A DNA stretch of 64,000 nucleotides, taken from the sequence record MK250017.1. One strand, given 5' to 3'. Below the pieces are notes generated by a model. That model searched no databases. It was not told the DNA's origin and was given only the letters and a program-made list of their open reading frames with translations. Below, piece by piece: positions 29,387 to 61,838 of the stretch (the first letter of the stretch is position 1; each line of letters starts with the position of its first letter). A program made the translations under genes and the position numbers.

Positions 29387-30934
29387 TTATGCACTTTGTT
29401 TTCTATGTTCAAGAATATGCTTTAATTCTTCATATTCTGTATTAGCTATTTTCTTATCCATTTTTGCTGCTTTTCGCAATGCAAAATAATGTGTAAGAAT
29501 AGCAGGAACCACAGCATTTGGATCTTTTTTATAAACAGCACCCGAACATGTTTTAATTTCATCAGATTTTGGTATATAATTCTCATCTTTAAATAAAAAT
29601 GATTCTGGAGAAATCTGGAACTGCCTCATGATACTCGGATATAGGGAAGCGAAATCCAGTCCACCTATGTATTTGAAGATACCGGGTCTAGTAGGCCATA
29701 CAAAAGCGCCCTGATAATCTCCATCTGAATTGTCTGTTTTTTTATAAGATTTCTCTGGTATTACTTTATAATTTGGATACACAAAGTTACACATTACGAC
29801 ATGTGTAGGTTGAATTGTTGAGAATGCAACATTTAATTCAAGTCTGAGTTCACATGCGAGCATATACCAGATTTCAGCAGTTTTTAGGAATTTATCGATA
29901 TGTTCTACCAATATTGTATCGATGCAATTATAAAATACATATTCTTTGAAATGTTCTTCATAGAATTCTTTGAATCCCCAAGGGTGATTAACTTTTTTGA
30001 TGCCTAATGCTTTTTCTGCAACGAAGTCAAGTGTATTATTTTCTTTAGGTTGAATTGTCATATCCCATGTTTTATATACGAGTAAGTAGTCATATATAAT
30101 TTTGTGCATTGGGACTTTAACATTAATTGTTTTACCTCCAGCGCGTGGTGTAATTTTAAAGTTTGTAAATGTTCTGGTAGGAGATATTCTTTCAATATCA
30201 ATATTATTGATTTTGCATCTATTATAGATATATAACCAGTCGAATCCAAGGAAATTCCAACCAGACATTGCAGTAATTGGTGTGATGAAGTCTATGAAGT
30301 CTTCAAGCATTTCTCTTTCAGTAGGGAAATATCTGAATTCGAATTTATATCCTTTAGTTATATGGGTACCATTATTTTTTTCTGAATATTGTTCTATTTG
30401 TTCTTGAACCCAAATTTTTTCTTCTTCTGTTAGATTTTTCCTGGACCAAATAATTGTTTGTGGAAATTTGGTCATTGATATTGTATTGATTCTTGTAGAT
30501 GCTTCTTCTGGATCAGGAAAACCATCTTCAGAAACTTCTGTTTCAATATCGCACCACCATGTTGGCGGAATATTCATTTCAAATAATGGGTCAACTGCTT
30601 TTCCGAATGAATTTAGAATTTCATTTATACGAAGTTCTGGAAGTTTATCTACAGGATTTCTTCTAACCCATTTATTATCATATGATTTCCATTGATGCAT
30701 AACAGGAGTTCCATCGGGATTGAACTTATATTGTTTTGTTGCAAAATCATATTCTTGAAATGGTTTATCTGCATTTGCTTTATTTGTATATTTCCATTCG
30801 AACATTGATTCTTTAGGAACAGGATATTGTAAAAATTTAACATCTCCTTTTTTATCTACATATGAAACAAGTAATTTCTTTGTAGGTGTCCCATCTGGTA
30901 ATATAAAATCTATCTATTCTTTATTAATAATCAT
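29387..30934 (-). CDS. Family B DNA polymerase, N-terminal subunit (exonuclease + motif A; gp43A-like); single TAG at codon 7
   Basis: DIETE ExoI, GWNFLGFD, DFASLYPSIM; ends in the fingers helix without motifs B/C. Confidence 0.9.
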
Positions 30935-30963
30935 ACTTATATTAATGATATATTTTGCTAATA

Positions 30964-30992
30964 ATTATAGTAAGTTAATCAGTATAAGTTTA
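30964..30992 (-). promoter_or_regulatory. Sigma-70-type promoter TAAACT-N17-TATAAT
   Basis: -35 at 30987-30992, -10 at 30964-30969; upstream of the polymerase. Confidence 0.5.
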
Positions 30993-31598
30993 GATTACTT
31001 TACTGATTAACTTAAGTTTTAATGCTTCATCTGCTGTTATTACCCAGTCTTTTTTCTTATCATAAATATCATCAAGATCTGCTTTTGTAATTGCTGTTTC
31101 TTTCATGAATAAATCAAATATCATATCATTTAATCGTTTTGCTTCTTTAACAGAATCTTCAAGTTCTGCGACTTTACCAACAGCAAGAGATGAAACCGTA
31201 TGAATCATAAATGTTGTATTTTTATATGCAAATCGTTGTTCATATGGAACTGAGAGAAGAATAAATGTCCCAGCAGATAAGCATGCACCAACTGCATATA
31301 TATTAACTTTACAATGGTTATTAAGATTTCTTAACATATCATGTATAGCCCAACCATCATAACATGCCCCGCCAAAAGTATTAAGATATACATTTACATC
31401 AGGTGGAGTAATTTTTTCCTTTAGCTTTTGATGAAATGTATCTTCTAATATTTTGGTATTTTCTTTTATTATTTTATTATCTTTTATTATTAAGTTATTA
31501 CAAAATTTAACAGTATCACATGATGTAACATTATCTATATCATCATTAATATATAATACTCTATCTGATAAATTGAATGTTTGTAATTCGTTTGTCAT
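30990..31598 (-). CDS. clpP: ClpP-like serine protease
   Basis: NTFGGACYDG, CLSAG (Ser), FMIH (His), DWVITADEA (Asp). Confidence 0.85.
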   Translation of the reverse strand: MTNELQTFNLSDRVLYINDDIDNVTSCDTVKFCNNLIIKDNKIIKENTKILEDTFHQKLKEKITPPDVNVYLNTFGGACYDGWAIHDMLRNLNNHCKVNIYAVGACLSAGTFILLSVPYEQRFAYKNTTFMIHTVSSLAVGKVAELEDSVKEAKRLNDMIFDLFMKETAITKADLDDIYDKKKDWVITADEALKLKLISKVI

Positions 31599-31710
31599 CT
31601 ACTTTATTATTATAATTTAACTTTATATGTTATATAACAGAAATTAACTTTTGTTTGAAATAAAAAAGGATATTACATTGCCGTGTAATATCCTTTAATA
31701 TATTAATTTT

Positions 31711-32316
31711 TTATCTTCTACCACCAAAATGTCCTGTTCCTCTATTATTTGATGGGAAATGCCCTTGTGTTACTCTCGTTGAACTTCTTCTGGAACCAAA
31801 ACCATTAGGTCTCCTATTAGATGGTTGACTATTTAAATTTGGTCTTCGAACCATTGGTGGACGTTGCTGATTTCCAAATGATTGTCTATGATTTGGTTTA
31901 CCATAATTAAATGGTGGTCGACTATCATGTGGTTTTCCATAATTTGGATTTCTATATGGTCTCATTGGTGGACGTTTAAATTCATAATCACGTGGACCAT
32001 GTCTCATATAATGTCTATAACCAGGATTATAATGATATACATATCCATGAGGTCTGCAATAATGAGATGGATAGAAATACCAATAATTATTATATCTATA
32101 TGGATAATAATATATACCTCTATATAAATAGTAACTTAAAACATTATCAATATAATATGGTGTTCCATATCTAACAACAGTTGAAAATGTAACAGATGAT
32201 GTTGTATATGTATCATCATATTCATATGGTGATTGTGCAGATGCATATGTAGTTGAACAAGATGCAAATGTAATTATAGTAATTAGCAGAATCAAAAAAT
32301 ATTTAATCTTATTCAT
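31711..32316 (-). CDS. Lipoprotein with Tyr/Arg/Pro/Gly-rich low-complexity tail
   Basis: Signal peptide II FASC. Confidence 0.7.
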   Translation of the reverse strand: MNKIKYFLILLITIITFASCSTTYASAQSPYEYDDTYTTSSVTFSTVVRYGTPYYIDNVLSYYLYRGIYYYPYRYNNYWYFYPSHYCRPHGYVYHYNPGYRHYMRHGPRDYEFKRPPMRPYRNPNYGKPHDSRPPFNYGKPNHRQSFGNQQRPPMVRRPNLNSQPSNRRPNGFGSRRSSTRVTQGHFPSNNRGTGHFGGRR

Positions 32317-32413
32317 ATCTTTAAAATTTTTAATATTTATATATTAGTATATGTAAAAATGCTATGGGTAAATTCATATTTGTTAATATGAAATACCATA
32401 TATTTTTATATTA

Positions 32414-32421
32414 CAAAGATA
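32414..32421 (-). promoter_or_regulatory. Bacteroidetes-type -7 promoter element
   Basis: TATCTTTG next to an N gap. Confidence 0.65.
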
Positions 32422-32445
32422 CATNNNNNNNNNNNNNNNNNNNNN

Positions 32446-33287: not shown

Positions 33288-34154
33288 ATGAATTCTAAAT
33301 AGATTGGAAAGTTAATATATAATTTAGATCTAGGAAAATTTAATAATAAAACAAAATTATTTGAATCAAATAATAAAGATAATTGGTGGAGAAATGAAGA
33401 AACGTTTAATACAATAAAATATCATCCATTAAATTCTAATACAAATAATTTATTATATAAAGAATATGAACAGGAATATTTATATGAAGGATTAATATGT
33501 TCAGCAGATCCAAATAAAACAAAAGATATATTAAATAGGAATGCAATTGGTTTTATACATGATATAAGAATTGTTTATAATCCATTATAGATAGATATGA
33601 AAACGCCTGTAATAGATTTTTTTATATATAAAGAAGACTATTATGATTTAGAATATGGAAAATTAGCTTATAATGAATTATTAACATTAATTAATAATTT
33701 AGGTTATTTCGTATCAGGTAAGAAAGAATTATCAACTATTATTAATATTGTTATAATGCCGAAATTTTTATATGAAGTTACAGATGAAATATATAAAGAA
33801 GATGGTATATTATATCATATAACACCGTTATAGAATAAAAAGAAAATTTTATAGAAAGGATTAATTCCAAAATATAAAAATTATAGATTAGATAATTATC
33901 CTGATAGAATATATTTTTATAGAAGTAATCAAAAAAATAAATTAGATTTATTATGTAAAAATTTATCATGTGATACATGTATAAAAGAATGGTTAATTCT
34001 TAAAATTAATCTTAAGGATAGGAGAAGTTATAAAGAAAATGATAAATCTACAATGTATCGTTTTTTTGAAGATCCAAAATCATAGTATGGCGTATTTACA
34101 TACGAAAATATAGATCCACAATGTATAGAATTTTATAAAGAAGTTAAATTATAA
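33288..34154 (+). CDS. ADP-ribosyltransferase/KptA-fold protein (TAG=Gln)
   Basis: LYHITP..KILQKGLIPK..YPDRIYF..ILKINL..TYENIDP; 288 aa; AATAAATA at 33255. Confidence 0.65.
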
Positions 34155-35277: not shown

Positions 35278-35615
35278 TTAATCAATAGTACCATCAAGAA
35301 GTTTATGAACTGCATCTTGACGTGTTTTACGAATTTCTGCAAGTGTAAACTCTTTTACAAGCTTACCGTCTTCAAACACCGTCTTCAATTCATTCTTATC
35401 TGATGCTTCATCTTCAATAGAAACTCGATCAATAGGTTTATAATTACCATTTTCATCCTTTACAACCATAATAAGACCACGATGTGATTTCTTTGGTGTA
35501 CCAGTAACAGTCTTTGGATCTTTAAAGATCTCTATCTGCTTATTATCTACTTTACACCATGTTGCCTTACATGCAAATGCAAGTTGGTCACGGGTGTTCA
35601 TTTGATAGGAAAATG
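35278..35615 (-). CDS. nadV: Nicotinamide phosphoribosyltransferase, exon 2
   Basis: Spliced junction restores LGIGSFSYQMNTRD; KDP..KKSHRG; joined CDS 1584 nt = 528 codons. Confidence 0.85.
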
Positions 35616-36992
35616 CTTAGAAATATTGCTTTATATGTTCATAAATATTATCAGTAAATAACTCAGAAGAATATGTTGTATATTTCCTAATATTTTTATA
35701 TTCCTATAAAATTTGTTGTTCTATACAAAATGCAGTATAAAGTTCATATTGTTTATAATATAATATCTCTATATCTAATACAATACTAGAATTACGCAAT
35801 GCAGATGAACGTAATGAACGTATTCTCTACTTTGGTGTTTCTTTTTTTGTTATACCTATTTTATAAAGTATTTGGTTATTTGTTTTATCAATAACTTTTA
35901 AATAATATAATATTCCTATATGTGATTTTTGTTCAGGATGATTATTAAACCAATCTATATTATATCCACCTGGTACATATCCATTTAATATAGTTCTTTC
36001 TATTTTACATTTAGGACATTCCTAACCTGCATTTAGAAATTTAGAAATTCTTTTTTCAAAAATCCCATGTTTTGGACAAATAATCTAAATTTTAGATTGT
36101 TTTGTTTTATAAATGTCTCTATTGCTTTCTGGATATGTATAATAATCGCCATATTTTTCTTTACACATACCAATAATCTAATCATATGTAAATGATTTAT
36201 GTAATGCTCTCATTTTATTACCACATAATGGACAACCATTTTTATTGCCGTTTATTATATGTGTACGAGCTAATACATTAAAAGCACCATGTATAGGACA
36301 GATAACCGTTATTTCTGAATTTACTAATCCGGTCCAGTTATCTAAATTATATGTAAATTTATTATTATATTTTTTATTAGCTATTTCTAAAAATTCTTCT
36401 TTTGTTATTCTGGATTCAATTTGAGCTTTTTTATTTGCTAATGTTCCCTTGTATGTTTTATCTTTATATTTCTATGCACACATTGGACATCCAAATTTAT
36501 TTCTTAAATGATCCATCGGGCGTTGCCAGAATGTTCCATGTTCTGGACAAATTATTTCAACTGGAGTTCGCATAGTTATATATTTTACTTTACTATAATC
36601 AAACTTATTATTGAATAATTTTTCACCTCTATTTATGAAACTTTGTTTATAAAACTCATTTCCACGGACTATTTCTTCACCCTCATCATTACATGCTAGG
36701 GGCAAGGCGCTTCCACCATTATTGGAATCTAATGGCGTACTCCCCGAAGGGATAGTCTCTGAACCTTCCTAATGAGTAGTCAATTCATTAGGCTTGGCTG
36801 CAGATTCTTGTACTATATTTTCTATTAAATTATCTGACATCTAAAAAGTATTTTTATGTTTCATTTTATTTATCGTGATAATAAAATATAAAATATGAAT
36901 ATACACATTCCTGCAATTCACCTTGTTATTCAATGCCACTTACGCAGCAAGGGAGCCATTTTTACAATCTGCCTCAACAGCAGTGTACGCTA
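35616..36992 (-). mobile_element. Group I intron in NAMPT
   Basis: Exon 1 ends in U and the intron ends in G; P AATTGCAGGAA, Q AATCTGCAGC, R TCAGAGACTA, S AAGAAATAGTCC; IGS AAAATG-G-CTC (36953-36962) pairs both exons. Confidence 0.92.
35617..36840 (-). CDS. Intron-encoded endonuclease (three CPxHG..CPxC Zn-ribbon repeats + YKIGIT GIY-YIG-like domain; TAG=Gln)
   Basis: Frame open from ATG 36840 (or 36864) to TAA next to the 3' splice site. Confidence 0.8.
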
Positions 36993-38238
36993 ACCCAATT
37001 CCCAAAATCAAATTAGTAGCAGCAAACATCTTATCTTCAAGTTGCGCATAAATCATTCTTTGACGTTTCATATTGATAGAATCACCATAAAGAAGTCCAA
37101 TATGTGTATCAAGTACTTTATATCCCTTCTTATTAAATGTTCCACCAAATGTATTCCAAAGAAATTCATATGAACCCATCTTTACAAATTGATCATTTGC
37201 TTCTGAATCACCACAAATAATCTTTACAGGATCACCACTATCAGGACGGATAACTACTCGACCATTTCGACTCATAATCTGTTCCTTATACTTAGGTACG
37301 ATCTTTGTAATAAAATACCAGTAATCATAGCCGTCTGCTACAATAGAAATAATACCATCAGGAAATTCATCAAGCATTCTCTTAAAATAAATTTCATCAT
37401 CTGGAATACCAGAATCATTTGTTGCATTTGAACATTCCACTGAATGTTCTGTTGCAGGTACTGTAGCTGCAATTAATTCTTTCTTAGGATCTGCTTTATA
37501 ATAGTATTCAATCATTTTAATTGCAGGTACTGATTCAGAACCGCAAAATGATGTAAGATGTGCCATGCCTGAAGTGATTGTAGTTTCAAGAGAACTCATA
37601 CCTCTCATTGAAAAATCATGACACAAGAAATCAAGGTTAGACAAATCATTAGGATTATAAAAACCTGTTTTCATTGCATGTCTAACAAGTTCACGTCTAT
37701 AAACATCTGAAATTGTAGCGGATGTCATTGGTTGCCACAAAATATTTGAAAGAATAGACTCCAAATAATTAGTAAGCCAAGCAAAATCAGGATGTGTGTT
37801 TGTGATTGTCAAAACAGGACATCCGATTGGACAATATGAACCTTCAGGAAGTGCCTTAATTCTAATAGGGAGATAACCAAGCTTATGCAAAGCAATAATA
37901 TGATCTACTCCTACTTTCTTTGCAACTGCTTCACCAAGAAATGATGTAGTTAAATCAGTATATGTTTTTCTAACAGTATCTTCATCAAGGTTAAAGAAGA
38001 AATTATTAAACGTATTAATAAGATACTTCTTGATAAAATACTGAATACCAAATACAACTACACCTTCATTTGCCTCTGGGAGGTACTTATTTCCTCGTGG
38101 TGTAAAATTACTAAAAAGTTGTGTCATTCCCTTAGGATACATACAGTGATGACCAAGCTTGTAGCCATCAGTCATAAGCATTGCATTGAGAAGTATGTCT
38201 TCTACCATTACATGCTGAGAATCTTTTACGTTTGTCAT
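36993..38238 (-). CDS. nadV: Nicotinamide phosphoribosyltransferase, exon 1
   Basis: TDGYKLGH, HDFSMRG, VPATEHSV, IRPDSGDP, YGDSI motifs. Confidence 0.92.
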
Positions 38239-38441: not shown

Positions 38442-38987
38442 TTAAGCAACTTCACGTACTTCCCAATCACTGATTTCTACATCATACTTTTCTTTGTTAA
38501 TTGAAATAGATTTGATGTTCTTAAGCGACAATGTACGATATTCAATAACTGCAGTACTTGCCTTTTTCTTTGGCATAAATCTTTCCATATATGCTTTGTC
38601 AACTACAGAAATTGGTTCATCATTAAGAATAATGTTATTCTTGCAGTAATTGTTAGGAATATAAATCAAACATACATTACCTGTACTGTTATACTGCATA
38701 ATAACATTCTTAACAATATGACGTCTATTTGTATCAGTTGCCTTATAATCTTCTCCAAGGATTTTACTCATTGTTTTCTCGTAATCCTGACCGAAATGGA
38801 AAGTTACAGAGAAACTTGTGCGAGGCTGAAAGTCATCCTTGATTCTTTCCTTTGGAAGACCATCGGTGTTGAACTTATTCAACTTAATATCTGATTCACC
38901 ATAAACGGTTACATATTTACCATTACACTTAGCGTTTGCCATAATGTTGATAAACTCGTCTACTGATGTGATAATATTTGTATTCAT
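38442..38987 (-). CDS. Hypothetical protein
   Basis: 181-aa ORF. Confidence 0.75.
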   Translation of the reverse strand: MNTNIITSVDEFINIMANAKCNGKYVTVYGESDIKLNKFNTDGLPKERIKDDFQPRTSFSVTFHFGQDYEKTMSKILGEDYKATDTNRRHIVKNVIMQYNSTGNVCLIYIPNNYCKNNIILNDEPISVVDKAYMERFMPKKKASTAVIEYRTLSLKNIKSISINKEKYDVEISDWEVREVA

Positions 38988-39027: not shown

Positions 39028-39035
39028 CAAAGATA
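39028..39035 (-). promoter_or_regulatory. Bacteroidetes-type -7 promoter element
   Basis: TATCTTTG upstream of 38987. Confidence 0.75.
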
Positions 39036-39082: not shown

Positions 39083-39229
39083 TTATTTAAAATTGTCTCT
39101 GATGAAATTATCTATCACATCTTTTACAGAATTACATTTAAATTGTGTTTCAACATAACTACCAGTCCAATCTGTATGAACTTTAAAGTTATCTAAAAAC
39201 CATTTAGAAATTTTTTCTTTATTCATCAT
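39083..39229 (-). CDS. Small hypothetical protein
   Basis: 48 aa; ATGA overlap with the upstream stop. Confidence 0.5.
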   Translation of the reverse strand: MMNKEKISKWFLDNFKVHTDWTGSYVETQFKCNSVKDVIDNFIRDNFK

Positions 39230-39480
39230 TTTTGATTTTTTAAGTCATCAACCAATCGTTCTGTTTCTTTTAATAGAAAACGCAATACTATAAATAATCC
39301 ACAAAGGATAAAAATAAACATAATCCATAATATAGTATTATTATCATGTTTTTCCATTAATATAAAAAACATAATTATATCTATAGATGTAAACGGAAGA
39401 ATTAAATATATTATCCAATTTATTATATGGCGCCAAATTCGTTCTTCTATATAATTATTTTGTTTTATATTATTATTCAT
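39226..39480 (-). CDS. Small membrane protein (2 TM)
   Basis: Two hydrophobic helices. Confidence 0.6.
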   Translation of the reverse strand: MNNNIKQNNYIEERIWRHIINWIIYLILPFTSIDIIMFFILMEKHDNNTILWIMFIFILCGLFIVLRFLLKETERLVDDLKNQK

Positions 39481-39485
39481 ATTAC

Positions 39486-39863
39486 TTATTGTTTAATTTC
39501 TCTTTCTAAAATATTCTTTAATACCCATAATAACATATTATATGCAGTTTCTAACATATTATCATCTGCCGTAGTTTCTGCATGATAAATATCATCATTT
39601 TTAATATATTGTAATTGAATACATACAGGAGTAATAACAAGGAAATAATCTAATGTTATAATATCATCAATACGTTTATAAATATCTTCTAACGTATATG
39701 TATAAAAACCTAATTTACATTTGATAATAGTATCAATATACTTTTCATTTTTATTTAAATTATATTGTCCCTTACCCATATAAACAAGGGAAGCATCTGA
39801 AACATCAAGACCTGCATTAATAAGAGTATCCATCTGTTTCTTTGTTAAAGCTATTTTGTTCAT
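39486..39863 (-). CDS. Hypothetical protein
   Basis: LINAGLDVSDAS..AYNMLLWVL. Confidence 0.65.
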   Translation of the reverse strand: MNKIALTKKQMDTLINAGLDVSDASLVYMGKGQYNLNKNEKYIDTIIKCKLGFYTYTLEDIYKRIDDIITLDYFLVITPVCIQLQYIKNDDIYHAETTADDNMLETAYNMLLWVLKNILEREIKQ

Positions 39864-39889: not shown

Positions 39890-39897
39890 CAAAGATA
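39890..39897 (-). promoter_or_regulatory. Bacteroidetes-type -7 promoter element
   Basis: TATCTTTG upstream of 39863. Confidence 0.75.
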
Positions 39898-39968: not shown

Positions 39969-40985
39969 TTACATGATATATTGTAAAAGCATTCTTGTTT
40001 CTTCATCTTGTCCGAGTTTTTTATTAGCCTCTCTCAAAATCTAATTAACTCGTGTTTCTGTCATATTGTTTTCTTCTGCAATTTGCCAGGTATTTTTCTC
40101 AGGACGACCATTAATAGCATAGCATGCACAAACAATTTCACCATTTCTTTTACCCATAACTCTCTTGATATTATCTTCAAGTTCTCTTGTTAAATCTTCA
40201 TTTTCAAGACTACTTCCAGGCTCATTGAAAACATTATTTGTTGTCATATCACCTAATGTTACTTTAGAATCTCCATCATCTCCAACAGATTGATCTAAAC
40301 TATTTGCACGAGCATTTGCTTTCATCGTCTATACAAATGAATCATAAGTTAAATTAGGATGTTTCTTAACTAATACATCATAAATATCATCAATATCAGG
40401 TTCATAACCATTCTTATTAAATAAACGTTCTTTTACACGAGCAGCTTCACGAGCAATACTACCCATATTACGAGGAACTGCCATATGACCACCTACTTCA
40501 TCAACTGCCATCATAATCTCACGACGAATATACCAAATAGCATATGATACAAATTTTACATCTTTTTCTGGTGTACTTGGATCATATGTTTCAGCTGCTT
40601 TCATAAGTCCAATATTACCATATTGAATTAAATCTTCTTTAGGAATATTAAGATTTTTATACTTATTAACAACAGTAACAACAAACGGAAGATTTGCAGA
40701 AACTAATTTATTTTTTGCTGCCTCTACCTATCTCTTATTTGACGAATGCTGAATAATATCTGCAAGTTTGCATTCATCTTCATGTGTTAATCTTTGTTTC
40801 TTATTAATTGCTTTTAAATATGCTACAAATGATTTTGCTGTATTTTCATCCTATGTAATAGTAAAATCATCATGTAAATCCATATGCATTCCATTATTAT
40901 CTTCATTAAGAGTATTTCGTAATGAACGAGAAATACCTTCCATAAGGCTATTATACAATGCTTTCTTTTTATTAATTACTCTCAT
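39969..40985 (-). CDS. RpoD-like sigma-70 factor with N-terminal extension (TAG=Gln, 4 TAG)
   Basis: Region 1.2 YLKAINK..LTHEDE; region 2 LVSANLPFVV..DLIQYGNIGLMKAAETYDP..KFVSYAIWYIRREI; region 4 TETRVNQIL; 338 aa. Confidence 0.9.
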
Positions 40986-41040
40986 ATTTTATTTAATAAA
41001 TTAATTTCAATAATTTATTATATTTATCAATATATAAAAA

Positions 41041-42738: not shown

Positions 42739-42746
42739 CAAAGATA
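42739..42746 (-). promoter_or_regulatory. Bacteroidetes-type -7 promoter element
   Basis: TATCTTTG upstream of 42698. Confidence 0.75.
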
Positions 42747-43589: not shown

Positions 43590-43652
43590 TTTTTATTCTT
43601 AAAATAATTTCACTTAAATAAATATCATAAATGAAATAGTTATCGTAACTAA

Positions 43653-47486: not shown

Positions 47487-47616
47487 TTAAAATAAATCAA
47501 TAATTATTTTATATATTTATTTTGTTATAATTATTTATTATAACATTATCATTTACCATAAAATTAAAGAGTATAACTTTTTAAATTATACTCTTTATTC
47601 TTTATTTTGTTTTTAA

Positions 47617-48246: not shown

Positions 48247-48334
48247 ATGTCATTAAATATATTTTATATATTTATTTTCTATATAATAAAAGAAAGAGTT
48301 AGATATTCGAATATCTAACTCTTTTATATTTTTA

Positions 48335-50230: not shown

Positions 50231-50351
50231 TATTATGCTTTTATTTAGTTTTTATATTTATTATATATAAAAATAGGTAATATGTTTATGAAAAATACAT
50301 ATTACCTATCAAACAAAATTAAACAATTAAATATATATATTATGAAAAATG

Positions 50352-50744
50352 TGGAGACATCCGGAGTCGAACCGGAGTATTACTAACTTGTCAATAATAA
50401 ACTATCTACGTGCGTATTTCTTAATTAGTTTTCATCATACATTCTTAGGAGTTAAACAGTTTAATGTCGTAATCACTCTTATTGGACAAAAAGTATAGTG
50501 AGTTTTATTTAACAGAGAAAACACTCACCGAACTCCGTGGCGATGCTCAACTTACCTTGTAAGGAGCAAATGCTTCAATGGGTTTATATTACCAATCCTA
50601 CCGGATTAAGCTGCCATACGAAAATCAATTTCGTCGTCATTTAAATTTATTTGCTAAATTTCTTTGTATTACTACAAAAGGCTTTTAACTTTCCTACACG
50701 ATTTATTACCACATAATTAATAAGCAAAACCAAAAAATGTCCCC
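50352..50744 (-). ncRNA. ssrA: tmRNA
   Basis: 5' GGGGACA pairs 3' TGTCTCC (G3.U70); T arm CCGG-TTCGACT-CCGG; tag frame DDEIDFRMAA* at 50606-50638. Confidence 0.92.
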
Positions 50745-51985: not shown

Positions 51986-51993
51986 CAAAGATA
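51986..51993 (-). promoter_or_regulatory. Bacteroidetes-type -7 element, nested in an AAAACT-N17-TATAAA promoter (51977-52005)
   Basis: TATCTTTG upstream of 51953. Confidence 0.7.
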
Positions 51994-52062
51994 CATAAAA
52001 GTTTTTAAAATAAAAAATGGAGACTATATGAATAATCTCCATTTAATGTATAATATCATTTT

Positions 52063-52614: not shown

Positions 52615-52652
52615 AATTGTAAAAAATTAAAAATATTACTAATGTCATGTCG

Positions 52653-52724
52653 TTGGGGATCCGAGACTCGAACTCGGCCTAAGAGTTTTAGAGACTCCTG
52701 TACTGACCACTATACTAATCCCCA
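52653..52724 (-). tRNA. Amber suppressor tRNA (anticodon CTA), Gln-like
   Basis: TGGGGAT/ATCCCCA (U1-A72, G2-C71, G3-C70); loop CT-CTA-AA; canonical T arm. Confidence 0.92.
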
Positions 52725-52754
52725 ATACTATATTTTAATTTACATAACTATTAA

Positions 52755-53525
52755 TTATTCTATATAATCGCTTAATTTCTATTTGTAATGATAATATGTT
52801 GATTTACATACATTATATTTAGTTAAAAAATCTGATTCTGATATATTATTTACAATATCATTCTTCATATCTACTGTTAATTTACTGCAGCCATTAGAAT
52901 TAAATAACTATATTTTCTAATTATATTTAGATATTTTCTACATTAATTCTTGTTTATCACGTGATAATATATATCGTTTTTTAACTAAAAGATTACTGAC
53001 ACTACCTCTTGTAAAATTAACATTCATATCACGTTTTAATTGTTGTAATGATGTAGATGAAACAATATTCTTTGTATTTACATCATAACAATATATTGTA
53101 TGCCTTCCATCATTCTATTTTTCATATGATTTTTTCTAAACTATTAATTTCTATTCATCTGTGAATTTATATCCATCAATACCACCATCACCACCTTTTG
53201 TTTGATTATAACCAGTAGCTCCATAACTATTATATTTACGAATATACTATTTTTCTAATAGATCTAATTGTTGTTTTATATCAGACGTGATATAATTATC
53301 AAATGTTTTTAATATATATAATGAAAAGGAATCTATACCATATTTCTTAAATGCTTTATATATTGGCGCATTATATCTATTATTAACAGAATTATTAATA
53401 TGATGTAATAATCTTTTATGTAGATTTATACTCTAACCAATATAACACTTTTTATTTATATCATTCTAAATCATATAAATACCCGGACACTATGGTATAT
53501 TATTTATAATATCATCTTTACTCAT
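52755..53525 (-). CDS. GIY-YIG homing endonuclease, Seg-like (TAG=Gln, ~11 TAG)
   Basis: Absent from the track; GIYMI..YIGQSINL..R..LEKQYI..GYNQTKGG; 256 aa. Confidence 0.9.
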
Positions 53526-53557
53526 AATAATTTTTAATATTTAATAACCATATTTTG

Positions 53558-53631
53558 TAGCCCCACTCAGATTCGAACTGAGTCAGCGAAAGTTAGAGTT
53601 TCGAATGCTTAAACCATTACATCATAGGGCA
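53558..53631 (-). tRNA. Second amber suppressor tRNA (anticodon CTA), Gln-like
   Basis: TGCCCTA/TGGGGCT (U1.U72 mismatch); CGAAA-CTCTAAC-TTTCG; CTCAG-TTCGAAT-CTGAG. Confidence 0.92.
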
Positions 53632-53646: not shown

Positions 53647-53997
53647 TTAAATATAATCTTTTCGTCCTGTTCCCGTTTCAGGATTCCATTTATAATATTC
53701 TTTTGGTAAAGTACCTTTACATGTATCAATTAATTTATAATCAGAAATATCAAATCCAAATTTTTGTATATATGTAATATCTGGTTTATTTATACCCCAT
53801 AAATAATAACCTTTTGAATTTTGAAATACATAATAAGTCCAAGTATTATCTATTTCTTCTTCGACTTTTACTTTCTTTTCTGTTTCATCAAATTCACGTA
53901 AAATTTCAATGTCATTTTCTGTAATCTTCATTCTCTTTAATTTCTTCGGAAGATTATTTGTATAACATTTTTGTCCTTTATATAAAAATTCAATCAT
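53647..53997 (-). CDS. Hypothetical protein
   Basis: 116 aa, TAG-free. Confidence 0.7.
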   Translation of the reverse strand: MIEFLYKGQKCYTNNLPKKLKRMKITENDIEILREFDETEKKVKVEEEIDNTWTYYVFQNSKGYYLWGINKPDITYIQKFGFDISDYKLIDTCKGTLPKEYYKWNPETGTGRKDYI

Positions 53998-54041: not shown

Positions 54042-54149
54042 AAATATTCTTAATTATTTTTAAATATTTTTAACTAAGTAATATAAAATATTTTTTGCAT
54101 TTAACATATATTATAACATGAAATATTAATAATGTCTAAAATATTTTTA

Positions 54150-55714: not shown

Positions 55715-57430
55715 TCAATTCAAACCTGTTACTTTTCCATCTACAAAATCAATATGCTTAGCTGCTGGTTCTTTAGGTAATCCTGGCATACGCATCATAT
55801 TTCCTGCAATAACAACAAAAAATTCTGCACCATTATTAATCTTTATTTCATCTATATTAAATATTGTATTATTATTTACAGATGGAATAACCTTAGGATT
55901 ATCAGAGAATGAATATTGTGTTTTTGCCATGCAAATAGGATATTCATAAATTTCATTAATAAATTCATCTTCATGATTTTCATATGTTCTATCAAATCTT
56001 GAAATAAATTTTAATGCATCTTTTGAATATCTTATATTATCTGGATTAATACCATATACATTTTTACATAGATCCGCAATTTTTTCCTTCATACTATCTA
56101 ATGTATGATATGCAAAAATAGGTAACATTGGTTTCCTATTATTGTCTACAATATCAACAACCTCTTTTGCAAGATCAATAGCACCATCACTGCCATTTAA
56201 ATAACTTGTATTCTTAATACATTTTACATTTCTACATGTACAGAAATTCTCAAGAATACGCTGTTCATTATTTGTATCAGTATCAAATACATTATTTGTT
56301 ACAACAATTCTTACACCAAATTTCTTAATATTTGTAATATGTTGTTCAAGATTCTTTAATCCAATTTCAAGTGATTTAATATCTTCTTTAGATAGATCTG
56401 TACATCCACCTTGATTTTTCAATCCTGGAATTGTCGCAACTAATACTACAACATCTGGACATAAACCATTCTTTCTACATTTAATATCTATAAATTTCTC
56501 TGCACCAAGATCTGAACCAAATCCTGCTTCAGTAACCACATAATCACATAATGATAAACCCATACGTGTCGCAATAACAGAATTACAACCATGAGCAATA
56601 TTAGCAAATGGTCCACCATGAACAATAACAGGATTATTATCCAAACTTTGAACAAGATTTGGTTTAATTGCATCTGATAGTAAAGCAACAATAGAACCTG
56701 TTATACCTAATTCACTGCAGAACATAAAACTACCATCTATACGTTCTGCAATAATAATCTTATTGATACGTCTGCGAAGATCATCAATATCACGTGCCAT
56801 ACAGAAAACTGCCATTAATTCAGAAGCGGGTGTAATATCAAATCCTGTTTGAATTAATTTACCATATTTCTGTGTTGTATATATTGTTCGAAGAGAACGA
56901 TCATTAATATCTAAACAACGTCTAAATGTAATATTTTTAATTTTTGATTCTTCTTCTGGATTCTGATAAAAATAATTATCAATAGCAGCTGCAATCATAT
57001 TATTTGCAGTTGTTATAGCATGAAAATCTCCTGTAAAATGTAAATTAATTTTATCCATAGGAACAATCTGTGAATAACCACCACCACATGCACCTCCTTT
57101 CATTCCGAAACAAGGTCCTAATGATGGTTCGCGTAACACCGCGATTGAATTTTTCTTGAGTTTTCGAAGTGCATCATTCAATCCAATACTTACAGTTGTT
57201 TTACCAATACCAGATTTAGTAGGACTAATAGAAGTAACAAGAATAAGATGTTTATCTGTATAACTTGTATACGGTTTCATTAATTCCAAAGGAATCTTTC
57301 CCATATACTTTCCATACATTTCAATATTTCCATTTGATGGTATATTACCTGTAGGAAATAATTTATTAAAAACACAATCAATACTTTGCATAGATGCTTC
57401 TTGAGCAATCTGAATATCTGATTTCATCAT
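55715..57430 (-). CDS. fhs: Formate--tetrahydrofolate ligase
   Basis: TSISPTKSGIGKTT, REPSLGPCFGMKGGACGGG, LHFTGDFHA, HGGPFANIAHGCNS, MPGLPKEP. Confidence 0.95.
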   Translation of the reverse strand: MMKSDIQIAQEASMQSIDCVFNKLFPTGNIPSNGNIEMYGKYMGKIPLELMKPYTSYTDKHLILVTSISPTKSGIGKTTVSIGLNDALRKLKKNSIAVLREPSLGPCFGMKGGACGGGYSQIVPMDKINLHFTGDFHAITTANNMIAAAIDNYFYQNPEEESKIKNITFRRCLDINDRSLRTIYTTQKYGKLIQTGFDITPASELMAVFCMARDIDDLRRRINKIIIAERIDGSFMFCSELGITGSIVALLSDAIKPNLVQSLDNNPVIVHGGPFANIAHGCNSVIATRMGLSLCDYVVTEAGFGSDLGAEKFIDIKCRKNGLCPDVVVLVATIPGLKNQGGCTDLSKEDIKSLEIGLKNLEQHITNIKKFGVRIVVTNNVFDTDTNNEQRILENFCTCRNVKCIKNTSYLNGSDGAIDLAKEVVDIVDNNRKPMLPIFAYHTLDSMKEKIADLCKNVYGINPDNIRYSKDALKFISRFDRTYENHEDEFINEIYEYPICMAKTQYSFSDNPKVIPSVNNNTIFNIDEIKINNGAEFFVVIAGNMMRMPGLPKEPAAKHIDFVDGKVTGLN

Positions 57431-58262: not shown

Positions 58263-58784
58263 TTAATGTCTTAATGTTCTTTCAGAAAGTAAAACATCAA
58301 GCTTATTATTCATATCTAAAATTTGATTTTTCAAATCTCCAATACACTATATCTGCTCTTTGTTTTCTATCAAAAATTGTTGAATTTTTTTAAGTTTTTC
58401 ATCAAAAATTATCTAATTTTTCTCAATTTTTTCAATGTTTTCTTTATCCTATTGTTTTTCTGCAATAAATTTAACAATCTCTATTAATGCATCATTATCT
58501 AATATATTAAATGACATTGTTTTGATTTCTTTGTCATTATAATCTACATATTTTACATCTATATGATTAATATAATTTTTACTATATGATAACATACTAC
58601 CAGATGCACCACCTGCTATTAAATTAATATCCAATATACGAGATGATATTATTTCACCATTTGAAACAATAACACCTGATTTTGTTATAGGATCTTCACC
58701 AAAGCAGAATAAATTACTTTTATATGCACCAATACGTTTAAGTACATTCTTTACATTTCCTTTTGCGAATATAATATCACTCAT
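58263..58784 (-). CDS. Hypothetical protein with coiled-coil tail (TAG=Gln, 3 TAG)
   Basis: Read-through of the TAG at 58449 gives 173 aa; AATAAATA at 58810. Confidence 0.7.
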
Positions 58785-58858
58785 TATTAAAGTAACTATT
58801 TCTTTATTCTATTTATTGATTTTTAATAAATATATAAAGTTTATTTTAATTAAAGAAG

Positions 58859-59305
58859 ATGAATAATAATCAATACGAAATACTACCAACTGCAAAATCT
58901 AATATTAATGCATATAACCGTTATCCATTTACATGTTATGAAGAAGCAGTTCAGAATATTATGTAGAAAAATTTAAAACCTGGAGAATAGGCTGTTGCAT
59001 ATTATTTTGATGAAAATTCTATTATAGGTATAAGTGCAATAACTGCATTTGGAAATTTAAAAAAAGCAGGAAATATTATTTTTAAAAGTGGTCAGGATCT
59101 CGATAGAGATCTAGAACATTTGCATAAAGATGTTGTTATGCACAAAAAGGTAATTAATAATATGGTTGATACTATTAATCATGCAAATAAAAACTGGTCA
59201 TAGATTGAAGGTAGAATTAAAAAAATAGAATAGAAATTTGATAAAGAACATGATACATTACATGTACAAGTAATCGATTTAGATAATTATGATTTAGATG
59301 TTTAA
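58859..59305 (+). CDS. Hypothetical protein (TAG=Gln, 4 TAG)
   Basis: Absent from the track; 148 aa; AATAAATA at 58825. Confidence 0.7.
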
Positions 59306-59544: not shown

Positions 59545-59577
59545 TAGTTTCCTCTAAAAATTTAATTATTAAAATAT

Positions 59578-60010: not shown

Positions 60011-60769
60011 TTAATAGTAGTCAGATAACTTAATTTGTGATTCATATACATTATCATTTTTATAATCAATTCTGTCATTTTTATCATTTCTTATATCTGA
60101 TAAAATTTCTTTCTTATCTGCTTGAATAACCAAAGGAATTGTAGAAATGTAAGAATTAATTATTTTATCATTTATCGGTGCTTTATATAATGGTCCATCT
60201 GCAACCCAGAAAAACTTATCCATAAATGCAATATAATATTGCATGCCTATCCTAGATAATGCATACATAGAAGCATTCCATAATGCAACATCTTTATGAG
60301 TCGTCCAATATATATTATCATCATATTTTTCTAATATATTTTTTGCACGTGGATCTGTAGTAAATCCTCCAAATTGAAGTATATCATAATCTACAGGTAT
60401 ATTATGAATAAAAGTTAAAAAAGTCTCATTATTTTTTAAAAATTTTATATCATCTTCCATTACTAATATATTAGAAAATCCTCTATCATAACATTCTTTT
60501 ACAATTGCATAATGATTTCTTGCACAATCATATTCATTTGCTTTTGTAAATCTACCTTTTCCAGATTCATTAAATGCAGATGCTATTAAACTATTATAAG
60601 GAAATTTTGTCGTATAATGATAACGTAACCATGTACTTTCATTAATATTATCAAAATTCATTTCCTTAAATTGTGTTTCCATATTATTTCTGCGATCTTT
60701 TCGATCACTTAAGTTTAATACATAACATATATCAAACTTTTCTTTTAATACATCTTGTAATTTTTCCAT
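60011..60769 (-). CDS. Glycosyltransferase family 25-like protein (start corrected to ATG 60769)
   Basis: YVLNLSDRKDRR, CARNH, LVMEDDI. Confidence 0.75.
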   Translation of the reverse strand: MEKLQDVLKEKFDICYVLNLSDRKDRRNNMETQFKEMNFDNINESTWLRYHYTTKFPYNSLIASAFNESGKGRFTKANEYDCARNHYAIVKECYDRGFSNILVMEDDIKFLKNNETFLTFIHNIPVDYDILQFGGFTTDPRAKNILEKYDDNIYWTTHKDVALWNASMYALSRIGMQYYIAFMDKFFWVADGPLYKAPINDKIINSYISTIPLVIQADKKEILSDIRNDKNDRIDYKNDNVYESQIKLSDYY

Positions 60770-60824
60770 AATAATAAAAAACTCTAATAGATAAATGTTA
60801 AAAATATCTATTAGAGCATACATT

Positions 60825-61370
60825 TTACATTTTTAATATATCTTGCATATTAACTGGTTCTGTATTGGTATTTTTAGATTTTCTTATTATTTGTTTCACT
60901 TGTGGTTGTTCAAAATAAATACCACTTTTATTATATTTACCTTTATCATATGCTCGTTCAATAGCTTTACGAACTCTACGCTTTGTTTTACCATCCATCA
61001 TATAATGATGCTGCTGATAATAAAGTTCACCTTGCTGATACATCATAGATTCAATAAACTGCTTTCTCTGCTCATGCTTTTGCTTTGTTTTTTCTCTTAT
61101 ATCTGATTCTGATTTTGCTTTTGCAATAGCTGCTTGTGTAATAAGAGTATTCATACCAGATTCTTCATTTAACGTCTCTACTTGCTTATCTAAATTATTA
61201 TCAATAGGTGTACCTGGAATTACTGTATTACCATCATCATATGCATATGATCTTTCAATTCTATCTTGTACTTTATCTTTAGATAACAACATTTTATTTA
61301 ATGTTTCATTATCAATAACTGAACCATTCTCAGTAATATAATTATTTAATGTGTTACTATATGCGGGCAT
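60825..61370 (-). CDS. Hypothetical protein
   Basis: 181 aa. Confidence 0.7.
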   Translation of the reverse strand: MPAYSNTLNNYITENGSVIDNETLNKMLLSKDKVQDRIERSYAYDDGNTVIPGTPIDNNLDKQVETLNEESGMNTLITQAAIAKAKSESDIREKTKQKHEQRKQFIESMMYQQGELYYQQHHYMMDGKTKRRVRKAIERAYDKGKYNKSGIYFEQPQVKQIIRKSKNTNTEPVNMQDILKM

Positions 61371-61394
61371 AATTTATTAATTGTATTTTTTAAT

Positions 61395-61781
61395 TTAAAA
61401 TGAATGTATATTATTATCAAGACTTGTCATTTCAGATGCTTTAAATTTACCATAAATCTTATTCCATCCTTTTGATAAACCGTTACATAACATACTGGTA
61501 TAATATGCAAATGGATTACTAAATCGTTCTGGATCAAAGCTTCGCCAATACATTGCAACATCCAACATTGCTGTCTGTATACAATCTTCCTTATCCTCTT
61601 GACATTTATAATGTTTCTTTTTTGCTAAATTTTCAGCAATTAACTAAAGCATGACAACAGCATTATATGTAAGTTCATCTCTCTATTTTGAAAGAACTAT
61701 TTCTTTCATCAACTCTTTATTCTACACATATGGTTTTCCACCTTTAGTTTTAATACCTTCTACTTTACTAAAATCTTCCAT
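61395..61781 (-). CDS. Late-transcription sigma factor, T4 gp55-like (TAG=Gln, 3 TAG)
   Basis: Absent from the track; PYVQNKEL (cf. HYVNNKEL), LIAENL, FDPERFSNPFAYYT (cf. FDETKYKNPHAYIT); 128 aa. Confidence 0.85.
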
Positions 61782-61809
61782 GGTTTTTAAATAAAAATAG
61801 CTATTTCTT

Positions 61810-61838
61810 ATTTTACTAAGAAATAGCTAAAAAGTTTT
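61810..61838 (-). promoter_or_regulatory. Degenerate sigma-70-type promoter AAAACT-N17-TAAAAT
   Basis: About 30 nt upstream of the gp55-like ATG. Confidence 0.4.

What the first reader, a model, noticed from the sequence alone, without database searches (positions are those of the whole stretch)
29387..61838. Candidate closed circuit coupling genetic-code switching to a sigma cascade
Inference built from the separate observations: host sigma (9 TAnnTTTG promoters) expresses TAG-free early genes; the phage sigma-70 expresses CTA tRNAs, tmRNA and the mRNAs for polymerase and gp55; amber suppression unlocks polymerase (TAG at codon 7) and gp55 (3 TAG); gp55 transcribes AATAAATA late genes (portal, lysozyme, protease and the sigma-70 itself) for the next round. 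Recoding of lytic and structural genes has been described. I am not aware of a description in which the master transcription and replication regulators are the gated points and the loop is closed by a virion-borne sigma. The promoter upstream of the suppressor tRNAs is only a degenerate match, which is the weakest link.
Basis: inference. Interest (0 to 1): 0.88.

Follow-up and report, generated by a model that had tools for sequence, protein, structure and literature searches.

The report
Code-switch timing in Lak megaphage
This stretch of the gut megaphage Lak-A1 has two promoter types that separate genes readable in the normal genetic code from genes needing the phage's own stop-codon-reading tRNAs, and its late transcription factor and DNA polymerase sit behind such stop codons; the proposed closed loop through a packaged sigma factor is not supported.

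Summary
The window is Prevotella phage Lak-A1, which reads TAG as Gln.
- two tRNA(CUA) genes and a tmRNA;
- a split family-B polymerase with TAG at codon 7;
- a gp55-like late sigma with three TAGs;
- nine TATCTTTG boxes before TAG-free genes;
- AATAAATA boxes before portal, protease and lysozyme.

Raw motif counts are not above chance; placement is. In 472 kb of Lak-C1 outside the window, 33 of 34 genes behind TATCTTTG are TAG-free, against 13 of 69 behind AATAAATA (p=3e-15). Clade B replicates this (p=3e-18).

The polymerase TAG belongs to a wider class. Of 33 single-TAG genes, 15 carry the TAG within codon 15 (1.9 expected), and nine of these are conserved in clade B.

The closed loop is not supported:
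- E. coli-type promoters are not enriched;
- tmRNA and polymerase lie in early-type units;
- the RpoD-like sigma has four TAGs in Lak-A1 but none in Lak-B3;
- a TAG-free ECF-type sigma sits in an early unit elsewhere in the genome;
- nothing bears on virion packaging.

Best reading: an open feed-forward cascade running early promoters, suppressor tRNAs, amber-gated gp55, late genes. No expression timing data were available.

The parts
32414..32421 (-). Early-type box TATCTTTG heading the unit 31711-32316, ClpP, PolB-N. Its upstream half is hidden by the gap 32425-32445.
30990..31598 (-). ClpP-like protease, TAG-free, directly upstream of PolB-N
   Evidence: PF00574, 6e-24
29387..30934 (-). Family-B DNA polymerase, N-terminal part (exonuclease domain plus start of the polymerase domain). 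Its single TAG is at codon 7 (30916-30914).
   Evidence: The TAG is conserved in Lak-C1, Lak-B3 and two IMG/VR contigs.
39028..39035 (-). Early-type box before TAG-free gene 38442-38987; NAMPT follows
39890..39897 (-). Early-type box before TAG-free genes 39486-39863 and 39226-39480
41021..41028 (-). Late-type variant box GATAAATA, 35 nt before the sigma-70 ATG. It follows a terminator-like hairpin at 41070-41041.
   Evidence: conserved in Lak-B3. Genome-wide, 16 of 17 genes behind GATAAATA carry TAG.
39969..40985 (-). RpoD/RpoS-like sigma factor (regions 2, 3 and 4), with 4 TAG at codons 45, 86, 219 and 315
   Evidence: The Lak-B3 orthologue has Q, E, Q, Q at these sites and no TAG.
42739..42746 (-). 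Early-type box heading 42297-42698 and three further genes up to the HAD gene 41077-41637
43617..43624 (+). Late box AATAAATA before the lysozyme-like gene 43653-44870 (5 TAG) and 44892-46175 (5 TAG)
47514..47539 (-). Two late boxes before 46233-47486 (11 TAG)
48269..48276 (-). Late box before the papain-like protease 47617-48246 (4 TAG)
50255..50262 (-). Late box before the T4-type portal 48335-50230 (10 TAG)
50349..50744 (-). tmRNA, 44 nt after ORF 50789-51139, inside the unit led by the early box at 51986-51993
   Evidence: RNA contigs are deeper over it in two RNA runs (a hint only).
51986..51993 (-). Early-type box heading 51150-51953, 50789-51139 and the tmRNA
52015..52044 (-). Terminator-like hairpin plus T-run that ends the tRNA-bearing unit
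52652..52724 (-). tRNA(CUA) no. 1, with a Gln-like acceptor (U1-A72, G2-C71, G3-C70)
   Evidence: Its 5' half resembles the phage tRNA-Gln(CTG). Present in Lak-C1 and Lak-B2, absent from Lak-B3.
52755..53525 (-). GIY-YIG homing-endonuclease gene between the two tRNAs; 11 TAG, the densest in the window
   Evidence: absent at this locus in Lak-B3
53557..53631 (-). tRNA(CUA) no. 2 (U1.U72 mismatch), 15 nt after TAG-free ORF 53647-53997
   Evidence: found only in clades A and C
54110..54138 (-). TAGACA-N17-TATAAT box (with TG), the nearest promoter candidate upstream of the tRNAs
   Evidence: conserved in clade B. It belongs to a weakly supported third class.
55715..57430 (-). Formate-tetrahydrofolate ligase, first gene of the TAG-free block that runs down to the tRNAs. 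It is preceded by a conserved hairpin (57532-57499) and TTATATAAT.
58810..58832 (.). Back-to-back late boxes driving 58263-58784 (-, 3 TAG) and 58859-59305 (+, 4 TAG)
61395..61781 (-). gp55-like late sigma, 128 aa, with TAG at codons 20, 33 and 46
   Evidence: phrog_234 at 9e-11. T4 gp55 (7D7C_F) is the only PDB hit, E=0.017. The TAGs are at identical sites in Lak-B3 and IMG/VR relatives. A 54%-identical relative has 2 TAGs at other sites.
61798..61829 (-). Hairpin plus T-run between the DnaJ stop and the gp55 ATG. Clade B keeps it through compensatory changes.

Best explanation
The region is part of the timed expression programme of Prevotella megaphage Lak-A1 (TAG = Gln). The programme works as an open feed-forward cascade, not a demonstrated closed loop.

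(1) Early. A long conserved element (T-run, about 12 nt, TG-TATCTTTG) carries the -7 box of the Bacteroidetes primary sigma. It heads units that the uninfected host can translate, because they lack TAG.
(2) Code switch. Two Gln-type tRNA(CUA) genes lie in a TAG-free block that ends at a terminator. Release factor 2 is also TAG-free. The tRNAs' promoter is not an early box. The best candidate is a conserved TAGACA-N17-TATAAT box.
(3) Gate. The gp55-like late sigma carries in-frame TAGs, so it can be made only once suppression works. A set of otherwise TAG-free genes carries one TAG within the first 15 codons: polymerase N-part, Mre11-like nuclease, Hsp90-like protein, a PD-(D/E)XK nuclease and others. 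These genes are held back in the same way.
(4) Late. gp55 with host core RNA polymerase reads (A/G)ATAAATA boxes 20-35 nt before TAG-rich structural, lysis and protease genes, and before the RpoD-like sigma gene.

Shown: the motifs, their placement, the TAG partition and the conservation. Inferred: which sigma reads which box, and the order in time.
For: IDENTITY AND CODE
- 100% identity to Lak-A1.
- TAG aligns with Gln in the Lak-B3 sigma-70 orthologue at 3 of 4 sites.
- The suppressor tRNAs have Gln-type features.
- Devoto 2019 reports the same code.

EARLY BOX
- Nine copies in the window, all on the coding strand, embedded in a consensus of about 45 nt built from 40 sites.
- It matches the sigma-ABfr -7 consensus TAnnTTTG (PMC7366714).

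LATE BOX
- AATAAATA is the most frequent 8-mer in the 60 nt before genes: 16 genes against 1.26 expected.
- Its distance to the ATG peaks at 20-35 nt. GATAAATA behaves the same way.

LINK TO THE CODE
- First genes behind the early box: 33/34 TAG-free (0.16 TAG per 1000 codons).
- First genes behind the late box: 13/69 TAG-free (11.8 per 1000). Fisher p=3e-15. Window alone: 7/7 against 8/17, p=0.022.
- Lak-B3 replicate: 44/45 against 21/90, p=3e-18.
- The split holds for downstream genes of the units.

GATES
- gp55 TAGs are conserved. A divergent relative still has 2.
- The polymerase codon-7 TAG is conserved in five genomes, with mostly synonymous change around it.
- N-terminal gates: 15 of 33 single-TAG genes against 1.9 expected, p=2e-9. 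Nine are conserved in clade B.

OTHER
- RF2 and the ECF-type sigma are TAG-free in both clades.
- No phage RNA polymerase beta-like gene was found, which fits sigma replacement on host core enzyme.
Against: - No time-resolved expression data exist. Public RNA runs are held only as contigs and cannot show starts or order.
- Promoters are motif inferences. Raw motif counts are not above chance.
- The gp55 promoter is unidentified. Only a hairpin lies before its ATG, plus a 7/8 (Lak-A1) or 8/8 (Lak-B3) late box 66 nt upstream, outside the usual distance.
- Some late-box genes are TAG-free, for example the prohead protease 15201-16955. TAG is therefore not obligatory for late genes.
- With about 8.5% nucleotide divergence between clades, keeping three TAGs is only weakly informative.
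- Lak-B3 has no detectable tRNA(CUA), and 13 of 51 Lak genomes lack one (PMC8346664). These tRNAs may not be the only switch.
- The T4 co-factor gp45 C-domain was not detected, and gp33 was not sought.
Confidence: 0.6

Rival explanations
1. The RpoD-like sigma is made late, packaged in the virion and injected. It then transcribes the suppressor tRNAs, tmRNA, polymerase and gp55 mRNAs in the next cell, so the loop closes.
For: - The RpoD-like sigma gene has a conserved late-type box (GATAAATA), and in Lak-A1 four TAGs, so in Lak-A1 it can only be made late.
- The box before the tRNA unit (TAGACA-N17-TATAAT) fits an RpoD-type sigma better than the Bacteroidetes host sigma. It is conserved in clade B.
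- A (T/A)AGAC-N15-18-TATA class shows 28 sense against 10 antisense sites in upstream regions. Lak-B3 shows 19 against 7.
Against: - There are no data on virion content.
- Lak-B3's orthologue has no TAG, so the gate on this sigma is not a conserved design.
- E. coli-type promoters are not enriched: 125 against 129+-12, and 0 strict sites in upstream regions.
- tmRNA and polymerase lie in early-box units without a promoter of their own.
- A TAG-free ECF-type sigma in an early unit could start a middle class without any packaged protein.
- I know of no precedent for a packaged sigma factor (own knowledge).
Confidence: 0.07
2. Passive codon drift. TAG has no gating role. Any gene that is expressed after the suppressor is present tolerates TAG as one more Gln codon and accumulates it neutrally. 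The promoter/TAG link is a consequence of timing, not a cause.
For: - In TAG-bearing genes, TAG supplies 1293 of 3318 Gln codons, so it acts as an ordinary synonymous codon there.
- TAG positions in gp55 turn over in a 54%-identical relative.
- The RpoD-like sigma lost or gained all four TAGs between clades.
- Several late-box genes have no TAG.
Against: Drift does not predict a single TAG within the first 15 codons of otherwise TAG-free long genes: 15 observed against 1.9 expected, nine conserved across clades, some in early-box units. The polymerase N-part has 1.9 TAG per 1000 codons, far below the late-gene average of 11.8, and its one TAG is at codon 7 in all five genomes.
Confidence: 0.22
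3. The suppressor tRNAs are made by the host holoenzyme. They would be read through from the TAG-free FTHFS block or from an unrecognised host-type promoter, so no phage sigma stands upstream of the code switch.
For: - No terminator is predicted between the FTHFS start (57430) and the terminator at 52044-52015.
- All genes of that block except the inserted GIY-YIG gene are TAG-free.
- tRNA no. 2 starts 15 nt after an ORF, so it is co-transcribed with it.
Against: No TATCTTTG element precedes this block. The conserved upstream elements are TATAAT-like, which the Bacteroidetes primary sigma is not known to use (PMC7366714).
Confidence: 0.2

Closest known systems
Stop-codon recoding as a post-transcriptional timer of late and lytic genes in phages (Borges et al., preprint 10.1101/2021.08.26.457843; Devoto et al. 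2019, PMC6784885)
   Same: Lak phages read TAG as Gln, encode tRNA(CUA) and RF2, leave large regions TAG-free, and use TAG in structural and lysis genes. The model is early genes in standard code, then a switch. The Fig. S5 legend already says that Lak replication genes are mostly alternatively coded.
   Different: In the texts searched, those papers give no promoters, no sigma factors and no positional analysis of TAG. New here: two promoter classes that partition TAG use, the amber-bearing late sigma, and the N-terminal single-TAG class.
Phage T4 late transcription (gp55 with gp33 and the gp45 clamp on host core RNA polymerase; late promoter TATAAATA at -10, no -35 element)
   Same: A small region-2-only sigma related to gp55, and an 8-bp A/T box as the only conserved element, at a fixed short distance before late morphogenetic genes (T4-type portal and prohead protease).
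   Different: The box is (A/G)ATAAATA. The T4 form TATAAATA is not clearly enriched. The protein has 128 aa against 185 in T4. The gp45 C-domain was not detected, and gp33 was not searched. The gp55 gene carries in-frame TAGs.
Bacteroidetes primary-sigma (sigma-ABfr) promoters: TAnnTTTG at -7, TTTG near -33
   Same: The invariant TATCTTTG fits TAnnTTTG, and a T-rich block covers the -33 zone.
   Different: The element is far more uniform and longer than host promoters (about 45 nt, with TG directly before the box). TTTG itself is present in only part of the sites. Recognition by the host sigma is inferred, not tested.
Phage sigma cascades (Bacillus phage SPO1; phiEco32 and 7-11)
   Same: Host sigma drives early genes, and phage-encoded sigma factors take over for later classes (abstracts listed).
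   Different: Here one step of the cascade additionally depends on a change of genetic code. There are three sigma-family genes: RpoD-like, ECF-like and gp55-like.

Membership tests
T4 gp55 late sigma family | Sequence similarity to gp55 / late-sigma profiles | tested here: met
   phrog_234 'late sigma transcription factor' at 9e-11. T4 gp55 (7D7C_F) is the only PDB sequence hit, E=0.017, over residues 12-102. Homologues in T4-like Sinorhizobium phages are annotated as late sigma. It is the only such gene in Lak-C1.
T4 gp55 late sigma family | Cognate -10-only late promoter before late genes | tested here: met
   RATAAATA lies 20-35 nt before the ATG of 82 genes with no other conserved block. 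That gp55 itself reads the box is inferred.
T4 gp55 late sigma family | Co-activators gp33 and the gp45 sliding clamp | tested here: inconclusive
   PF09116 (gp45 C-domain) gave no match in Lak-C1. gp33 was not searched. Divergent homologues may escape the profile.
Sigma-70 family, group 1-3 (RpoD-like) | Regions 2, 3 and 4 | tested here: met
   PF04542 1.4e-12, PF04539 1.9e-6, PF04545 weak. TIGR02997 scores 128 bits, far below its equivalog cut-off. It is a family member but no orthologue of a named sigma.
Sigma-70-type promoters (TTGACA-N17-TATAAT) as a class in this genome | More sites than chance, placed before genes | tested here: not met
   125 sites against 129+-12 in shuffles. There are 0 strict sites in upstream regions. 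A relaxed (T/A)AGAC-N15-18-TATA class is only modestly enriched.
Bacteroidetes sigma-ABfr promoter | TAnnTTTG at -7 upstream of genes, T-rich/TTTG near -33 | tested here: met
   Actual transcription starts and sigma dependence cannot be tested with these tools.
Code-15 (TAG=Gln) recoded phage | In-frame TAGs in conserved genes, aligned with Gln; tRNA(CUA); RF2 | tested here: met
   literature
Closed regulatory loop through a virion-borne sigma | The sigma protein is present in virions and is needed for tRNA(CUA) transcription | not testable with these tools
   No virion proteome or infection data are available. Indirect evidence is against a conserved design.
tmRNA | Covariance-model match over the full length | tested here: met
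   RF00023, 54 bits, model positions 1-374. ARAGORN did not call it.

The most novel reading that the evidence does not exclude
In Lak megaphages the suppressor tRNA is the master clock of the infection cycle. Amber codons are placed under selection as translational gates on the late sigma factor (gp55). They also act as single N-terminal gates on otherwise standard-code replication, recombination and chaperone genes (polymerase, Mre11-like nuclease, Hsp90-like protein). Transcriptional and translational timing are thereby wired in series. In clade A the RpoD-like sigma is gated as well and might be carried over in the virion.
Probability: 0.35. Interest if true: 0.8.

Novelty: new variant of a known kind. 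Interest (0 to 1): 0.62.

Why it matters
Stop-codon recoding in gut phages has been proposed to time late gene expression, mainly from the uneven distribution of recoded codons. This work adds three things:
- independent sequence evidence for that model in the largest known gut phages, because promoter class predicts code use almost perfectly in two clades;
- a concrete coupling point, because the late sigma factor itself needs suppression;
- a previously undescribed pattern, single amber codons in the first 15 codons of otherwise standard-code genes, which looks like a purpose-built translational gate.

Each point gives a testable prediction once a Lak phage or a reporter system in Prevotella or Bacteroides is available. 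The motifs also improve annotation of these genomes (gene starts, operons, temporal class).

Tried and rejected
I used Lak-C1 and Lak-B3 records instead, leaving out all stretches homologous to window 1-64000 (Lak-C1) or 1-34000 (Lak-B3, where the four N runs map), so that no gap letters were seen.
- E. coli-type promoter scan: no enrichment.
- De novo 7-mer search for a third promoter class among genes without a known box: nothing above about 3-fold. The (T/A)AGAC-N-TATA class came from phylogenetic footprinting and is only modestly supported.
- T4's own TATAAATA as the late box: not clearly above AT-rich controls.
- RNA evidence: all 22 runs are held as contigs only. Laying four RNA runs cannot give transcript starts or order. 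I report only hints: deeper contigs over the tmRNA, and one contig end at 53965 followed by an adapter.
- Search for tRNA(CUA) in Lak-B3: none among 30 tRNAs. Two insert-bearing tRNA-like genes remain unresolved.
- More divergent polymerase relatives: only A/B/C-like contigs were found.
- gp45 and phage RNA polymerase profiles: no matches. The control for PF00940 was uninformative.
- No structure prediction or complex prediction was run, because none would decide the timing question.

Full report
IDENTITY AND CODE. The window is 100% identical to Prevotella phage Lak-A1 (MK250015.1, about 172.7-236.7 kb) over the stretch tested. GC is about 25%. Reading TAG as a sense codon joins many fragments into long genes and gives 86% coding. 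The genome itself shows the code. TAGs interrupt conserved genes, including the T4-type portal (10 TAGs). In Lak-B3 the orthologue of the RpoD-like sigma has Q, E, Q, Q where Lak-A1 has TAG. Both tRNA(CUA) genes have Gln-type acceptor or D-arm features like the phage's own tRNA-Gln genes. This agrees with Devoto et al. 2019 and Crisci et al. 2021.

THE GAP. N runs lie at 5946-6108, 6317-6344, 28812-28843 and 32425-32445. The one inside the finding is intergenic. On one side, ORF 33189->32446 ends with TAA at the very edge. On the other side lies ATG-TATCTTTG of an early-type box whose upstream half is unread. No frame crosses it and no conclusion depends on it. I did not fill or look up any gap. 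Fetches from Lak-C1 and Lak-B3 left out the homologous stretches.

GENE CONTENT OF 29387-61838, almost all on the minus strand:
- early box 32414-32421, then 31711-32316, ClpP, and the family-B polymerase N-part (one TAG, codon 7);
- nicotinamide phosphoribosyltransferase split by a TAG-rich endonuclease gene;
- RpoD-like sigma (4 TAG); tRNA-Lys;
- lysozyme-like gene, papain-like protease and portal (all TAG-rich);
- tmRNA (Rfam 54 bits);
- a TAG-free block from formate-tetrahydrofolate ligase down to two tRNA(CUA) genes that flank a GIY-YIG gene (11 TAG);
- glycosyltransferase; gp55-like sigma (3 TAG); DnaJ and DnaK.

EARLY BOX. The window holds 80 matches to TAnnTTTG, but exactly nine TATCTTTG, all on the minus strand. 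Eight lie 26-97 nt before the ATG of a TAG-free gene. The count alone is not unusual: 9 against 6.3+-2.6 in shuffles. The placement and the flanks are unusual. Forty sites from the window and Lak-C1 share a consensus of about 45 nt: a T-run, about 12 nt, TG, TATCTTTG, then TAtTgTaAA. TAnnTTTG at -7 is the recognition sequence of the Bacteroidetes primary sigma (PMC7366714). Reading by the Prevotella holoenzyme is therefore plausible, but it is inferred.

LATE BOX. AATAAATA is the most frequent 8-mer in the 60 nt before genes: 16 genes against 1.26 expected. Its distance to the ATG peaks at 20-35 nt. GATAAATA behaves alike: 17 genes, 16 with TAG. CATAAATA never occurs there, and T4's TATAAATA is not clearly enriched. 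Overall RATAAATA is depleted in the window: 39 against 63.8+-7.7. That fits avoidance of stray promoters. No other block is conserved around it, as in T4 late promoters. It precedes portal, protease, the lysozyme-like gene, 46233-47486, 33288-34154 and the divergent pair at 58810-58832. It also precedes TAG-free genes such as the prohead protease at 15201-16955.

PROMOTER CLASS PREDICTS CODE USE.
- In 472 kb of Lak-C1 outside the window-equivalent, the first gene behind TATCTTTG is TAG-free in 33 of 34 cases (0.16 TAG per 1000 codons).
- Behind AATAAATA it is TAG-free in 13 of 69 cases (11.8 per 1000). Fisher p=3e-15. The window alone gives 7/7 against 8/17, p=0.022.
- Lak-B3, a different clade, gives 44/45 against 21/90, p=3e-18.
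- The difference persists for the second to fourth genes of the units.
This is the strongest result. As far as the searched literature shows, it is new support for the early-standard, late-recoded model.

THE CLAIMED GATES.
- Polymerase: ATG at 30934 and TAG at codon 7 are conserved in Lak-C1, Lak-B3 and two IMG/VR contigs, with mostly synonymous change downstream and a diverged upstream spacer. The TAG is therefore coding. The next ATG is at codon 44.
- gp55: the three TAGs sit at identical sites in clade B and in seven IMG/VR contigs. With 33 of 387 nt differing, this is weak evidence. A relative only 54% identical still has two TAGs at other positions. 71 non-recoded relatives have no TAG or TGA in the matched frame.
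- The family assignment rests on phrog_234 (9e-11) and on T4 gp55 being the only PDB hit.

A WIDER PATTERN. Among 33 genes of at least 150 aa with exactly one TAG, 15 carry it within the first 15 codons (1.9 expected; p=2e-9). Several cannot be start-codon artefacts, because conserved motifs or long Met-free stretches follow. Nine are conserved at the same site in Lak-B3: the polymerase N-part, an Mre11/SbcD-like phosphoesterase (codon 9), an Hsp90-like protein (codon 11), a PD-(D/E)XK nuclease, two DUF7487 proteins and others. Lak-B3 on its own shows 11 of 25. An early amber codon costs only a short peptide before the switch, so this looks like deliberate gating. It argues against pure codon drift.

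WHAT IS NOT SUPPORTED.
- (a) A sigma-70 promoter class. The consensus scan finds 125 sites against 129+-12 in shuffles, and no strict site lies in upstream regions.
- (b) Separate promoters for tmRNA and polymerase. The tmRNA starts 44 nt after an ORF in the unit led by the early box at 51986-51993. The polymerase follows ClpP in the unit led by 32414-32421.
- (c) gp55. Its ATG is preceded directly by a hairpin plus T-run that clade B keeps through compensatory changes. A late-like box lies 66 nt upstream (7/8 in Lak-A1, 8/8 in Lak-B3). The promoter is unknown. Read-through from the TAG-free DnaK-DnaJ unit is possible, and that would fit "mRNA first, translation later".
- (d) tRNAs. tRNA no. 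2 starts 15 nt after a TAG-free ORF. The 150-nt spacer before that ORF holds TAGACA-N17-TATAAT (54138-54110), which is conserved in clade B. A relaxed class (T/A)AGAC-N15-18-TATA is modestly enriched: 81 against 57 in shuffles; 28 sense against 10 antisense; Lak-B3 19 against 7. It has no link to TAG.
- (e) The gate on the RpoD-like sigma is not conserved: four TAGs in Lak-A1 and Lak-C1, none in Lak-B3. Its GATAAATA box and upstream terminator are conserved.
- (f) The genome has a third sigma-family gene outside the window. It is ECF-type and TAG-free in both clades. It is the second gene of a unit led by an early box, and has its own TAGACA-N17-TATAAA. RF2 is TAG-free too. A virion-borne sigma is therefore not required to start the cascade, and nothing here bears on packaging.

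COMPLICATIONS. The two tRNA(CUA) genes are the only ones in Lak-A1 and Lak-C1. Lak-B2 has only no. 1. Lak-B3 has neither, and none among its 30 tRNAs, although its portal, gp55 and polymerase carry TAGs. Crisci et al. report 38 of 51 genomes with such a tRNA. The suppressor may sit on a mobile cassette with the GIY-YIG gene, or another decoding route may exist.

RNA DATA. Only assembled contigs of public runs were available. In two RNA runs the contigs over the tmRNA are much deeper than their neighbours. In a pig run, one deep contig covering the tRNAs, tmRNA and part of the portal gene ends at 53965, followed by adapter sequence. These are hints that Lak RNAs exist in such samples. They say nothing about order.

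VERDICT. The anatomy is largely confirmed. The early/late promoter split with its coupling to the code is solid. The amber-bearing late sigma and the N-terminal gates make a coherent feed-forward timer. The sigma-70 leg and the closure of the loop are unsupported and partly contradicted. The general idea is known (Borges et al.). The promoter classes, the gated late sigma and the N-terminal gates are new details.

Noticed in passing
window 29387-30934; Lak-C1 390995-391360 and 393511-393786 (loci L029, L030 region): The family-B polymerase is encoded in at least three pieces about 230 kb apart. The second piece ends just after the DTD motif with an intein-like start (its second residue is a TAG). 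The third piece begins with an intein-like end (..HN|S) followed by the rest of the polymerase motif. This suggests a split intein or an intein broken by an insertion.
   Followed up: partly
window 35278-38238 (-): The nicotinamide phosphoribosyltransferase gene is split into 36940-38238 and 35278-35601 by an inserted DUF723/T5orf172 endonuclease gene (35617-36939) with 8 TAGs. The flanking halves are TAG-free.
   Followed up: no
window 52652-53631; L004, L005: The GIY-YIG gene and tRNA(CUA) no. 1 form an indel between closely related clade-B genomes: present in Lak-B2, absent in Lak-B3. The suppressor may travel with a homing endonuclease.
   Followed up: partly
Lak-B3 whole record (W01); 421798-422046: Lak-B3 uses TAG heavily but has no detectable tRNA(CUA). 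Two tRNA-like genes with long inserts are unresolved. How it decodes TAG is unexplained.
   Followed up: partly
window 41077-41637 and 41960-42286 (-): Two genes of an early-box unit end at TAG in the standard code, with a TAA backstop 3-7 codons later. Their products would gain a short tail after the code switch.
   Followed up: no
whole window: RATAAATA is depleted relative to shuffles (39 against 63.8+-7.7) even though it is the top motif before genes. This suggests selection against stray late promoters.
   Followed up: no
window 16982-17029, 22154-22188, 58810-58832: Late boxes occur as back-to-back divergent pairs that drive genes on both strands.
   Followed up: no
window 53965; 50349-50744: In a pig RNA run, a deep contig ends at 53965 followed by Illumina adapter. 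This could be a real RNA 5' end, about 30 nt inside the annotated ORF and just after a conserved TATATAAA. tmRNA contigs are much deeper than their neighbours in two runs.
   Followed up: partly
Lak-C1 about 333.3 kb, upstream of RF2: A tRNA-like 3' half (T-arm and acceptor) that ARAGORN does not call lies just before a hairpin and the RF2 gene, in both clades.
   Followed up: no
window 55715-57430, 30990-31598, 61846-63999: The window has a dense set of host-like helper genes, all TAG-free: formate-tetrahydrofolate ligase (680 bits), ClpP, DnaJ and DnaK. The Hsp90-like gene elsewhere carries an N-terminal TAG.
   Followed up: no
window 18543-18550 (-): The ninth TATCTTTG box lies inside a doubtful 77-aa ORF, 160 nt before gene 17775-18383. 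Either the ORF is spurious or the leader is unusually long.
   Followed up: no
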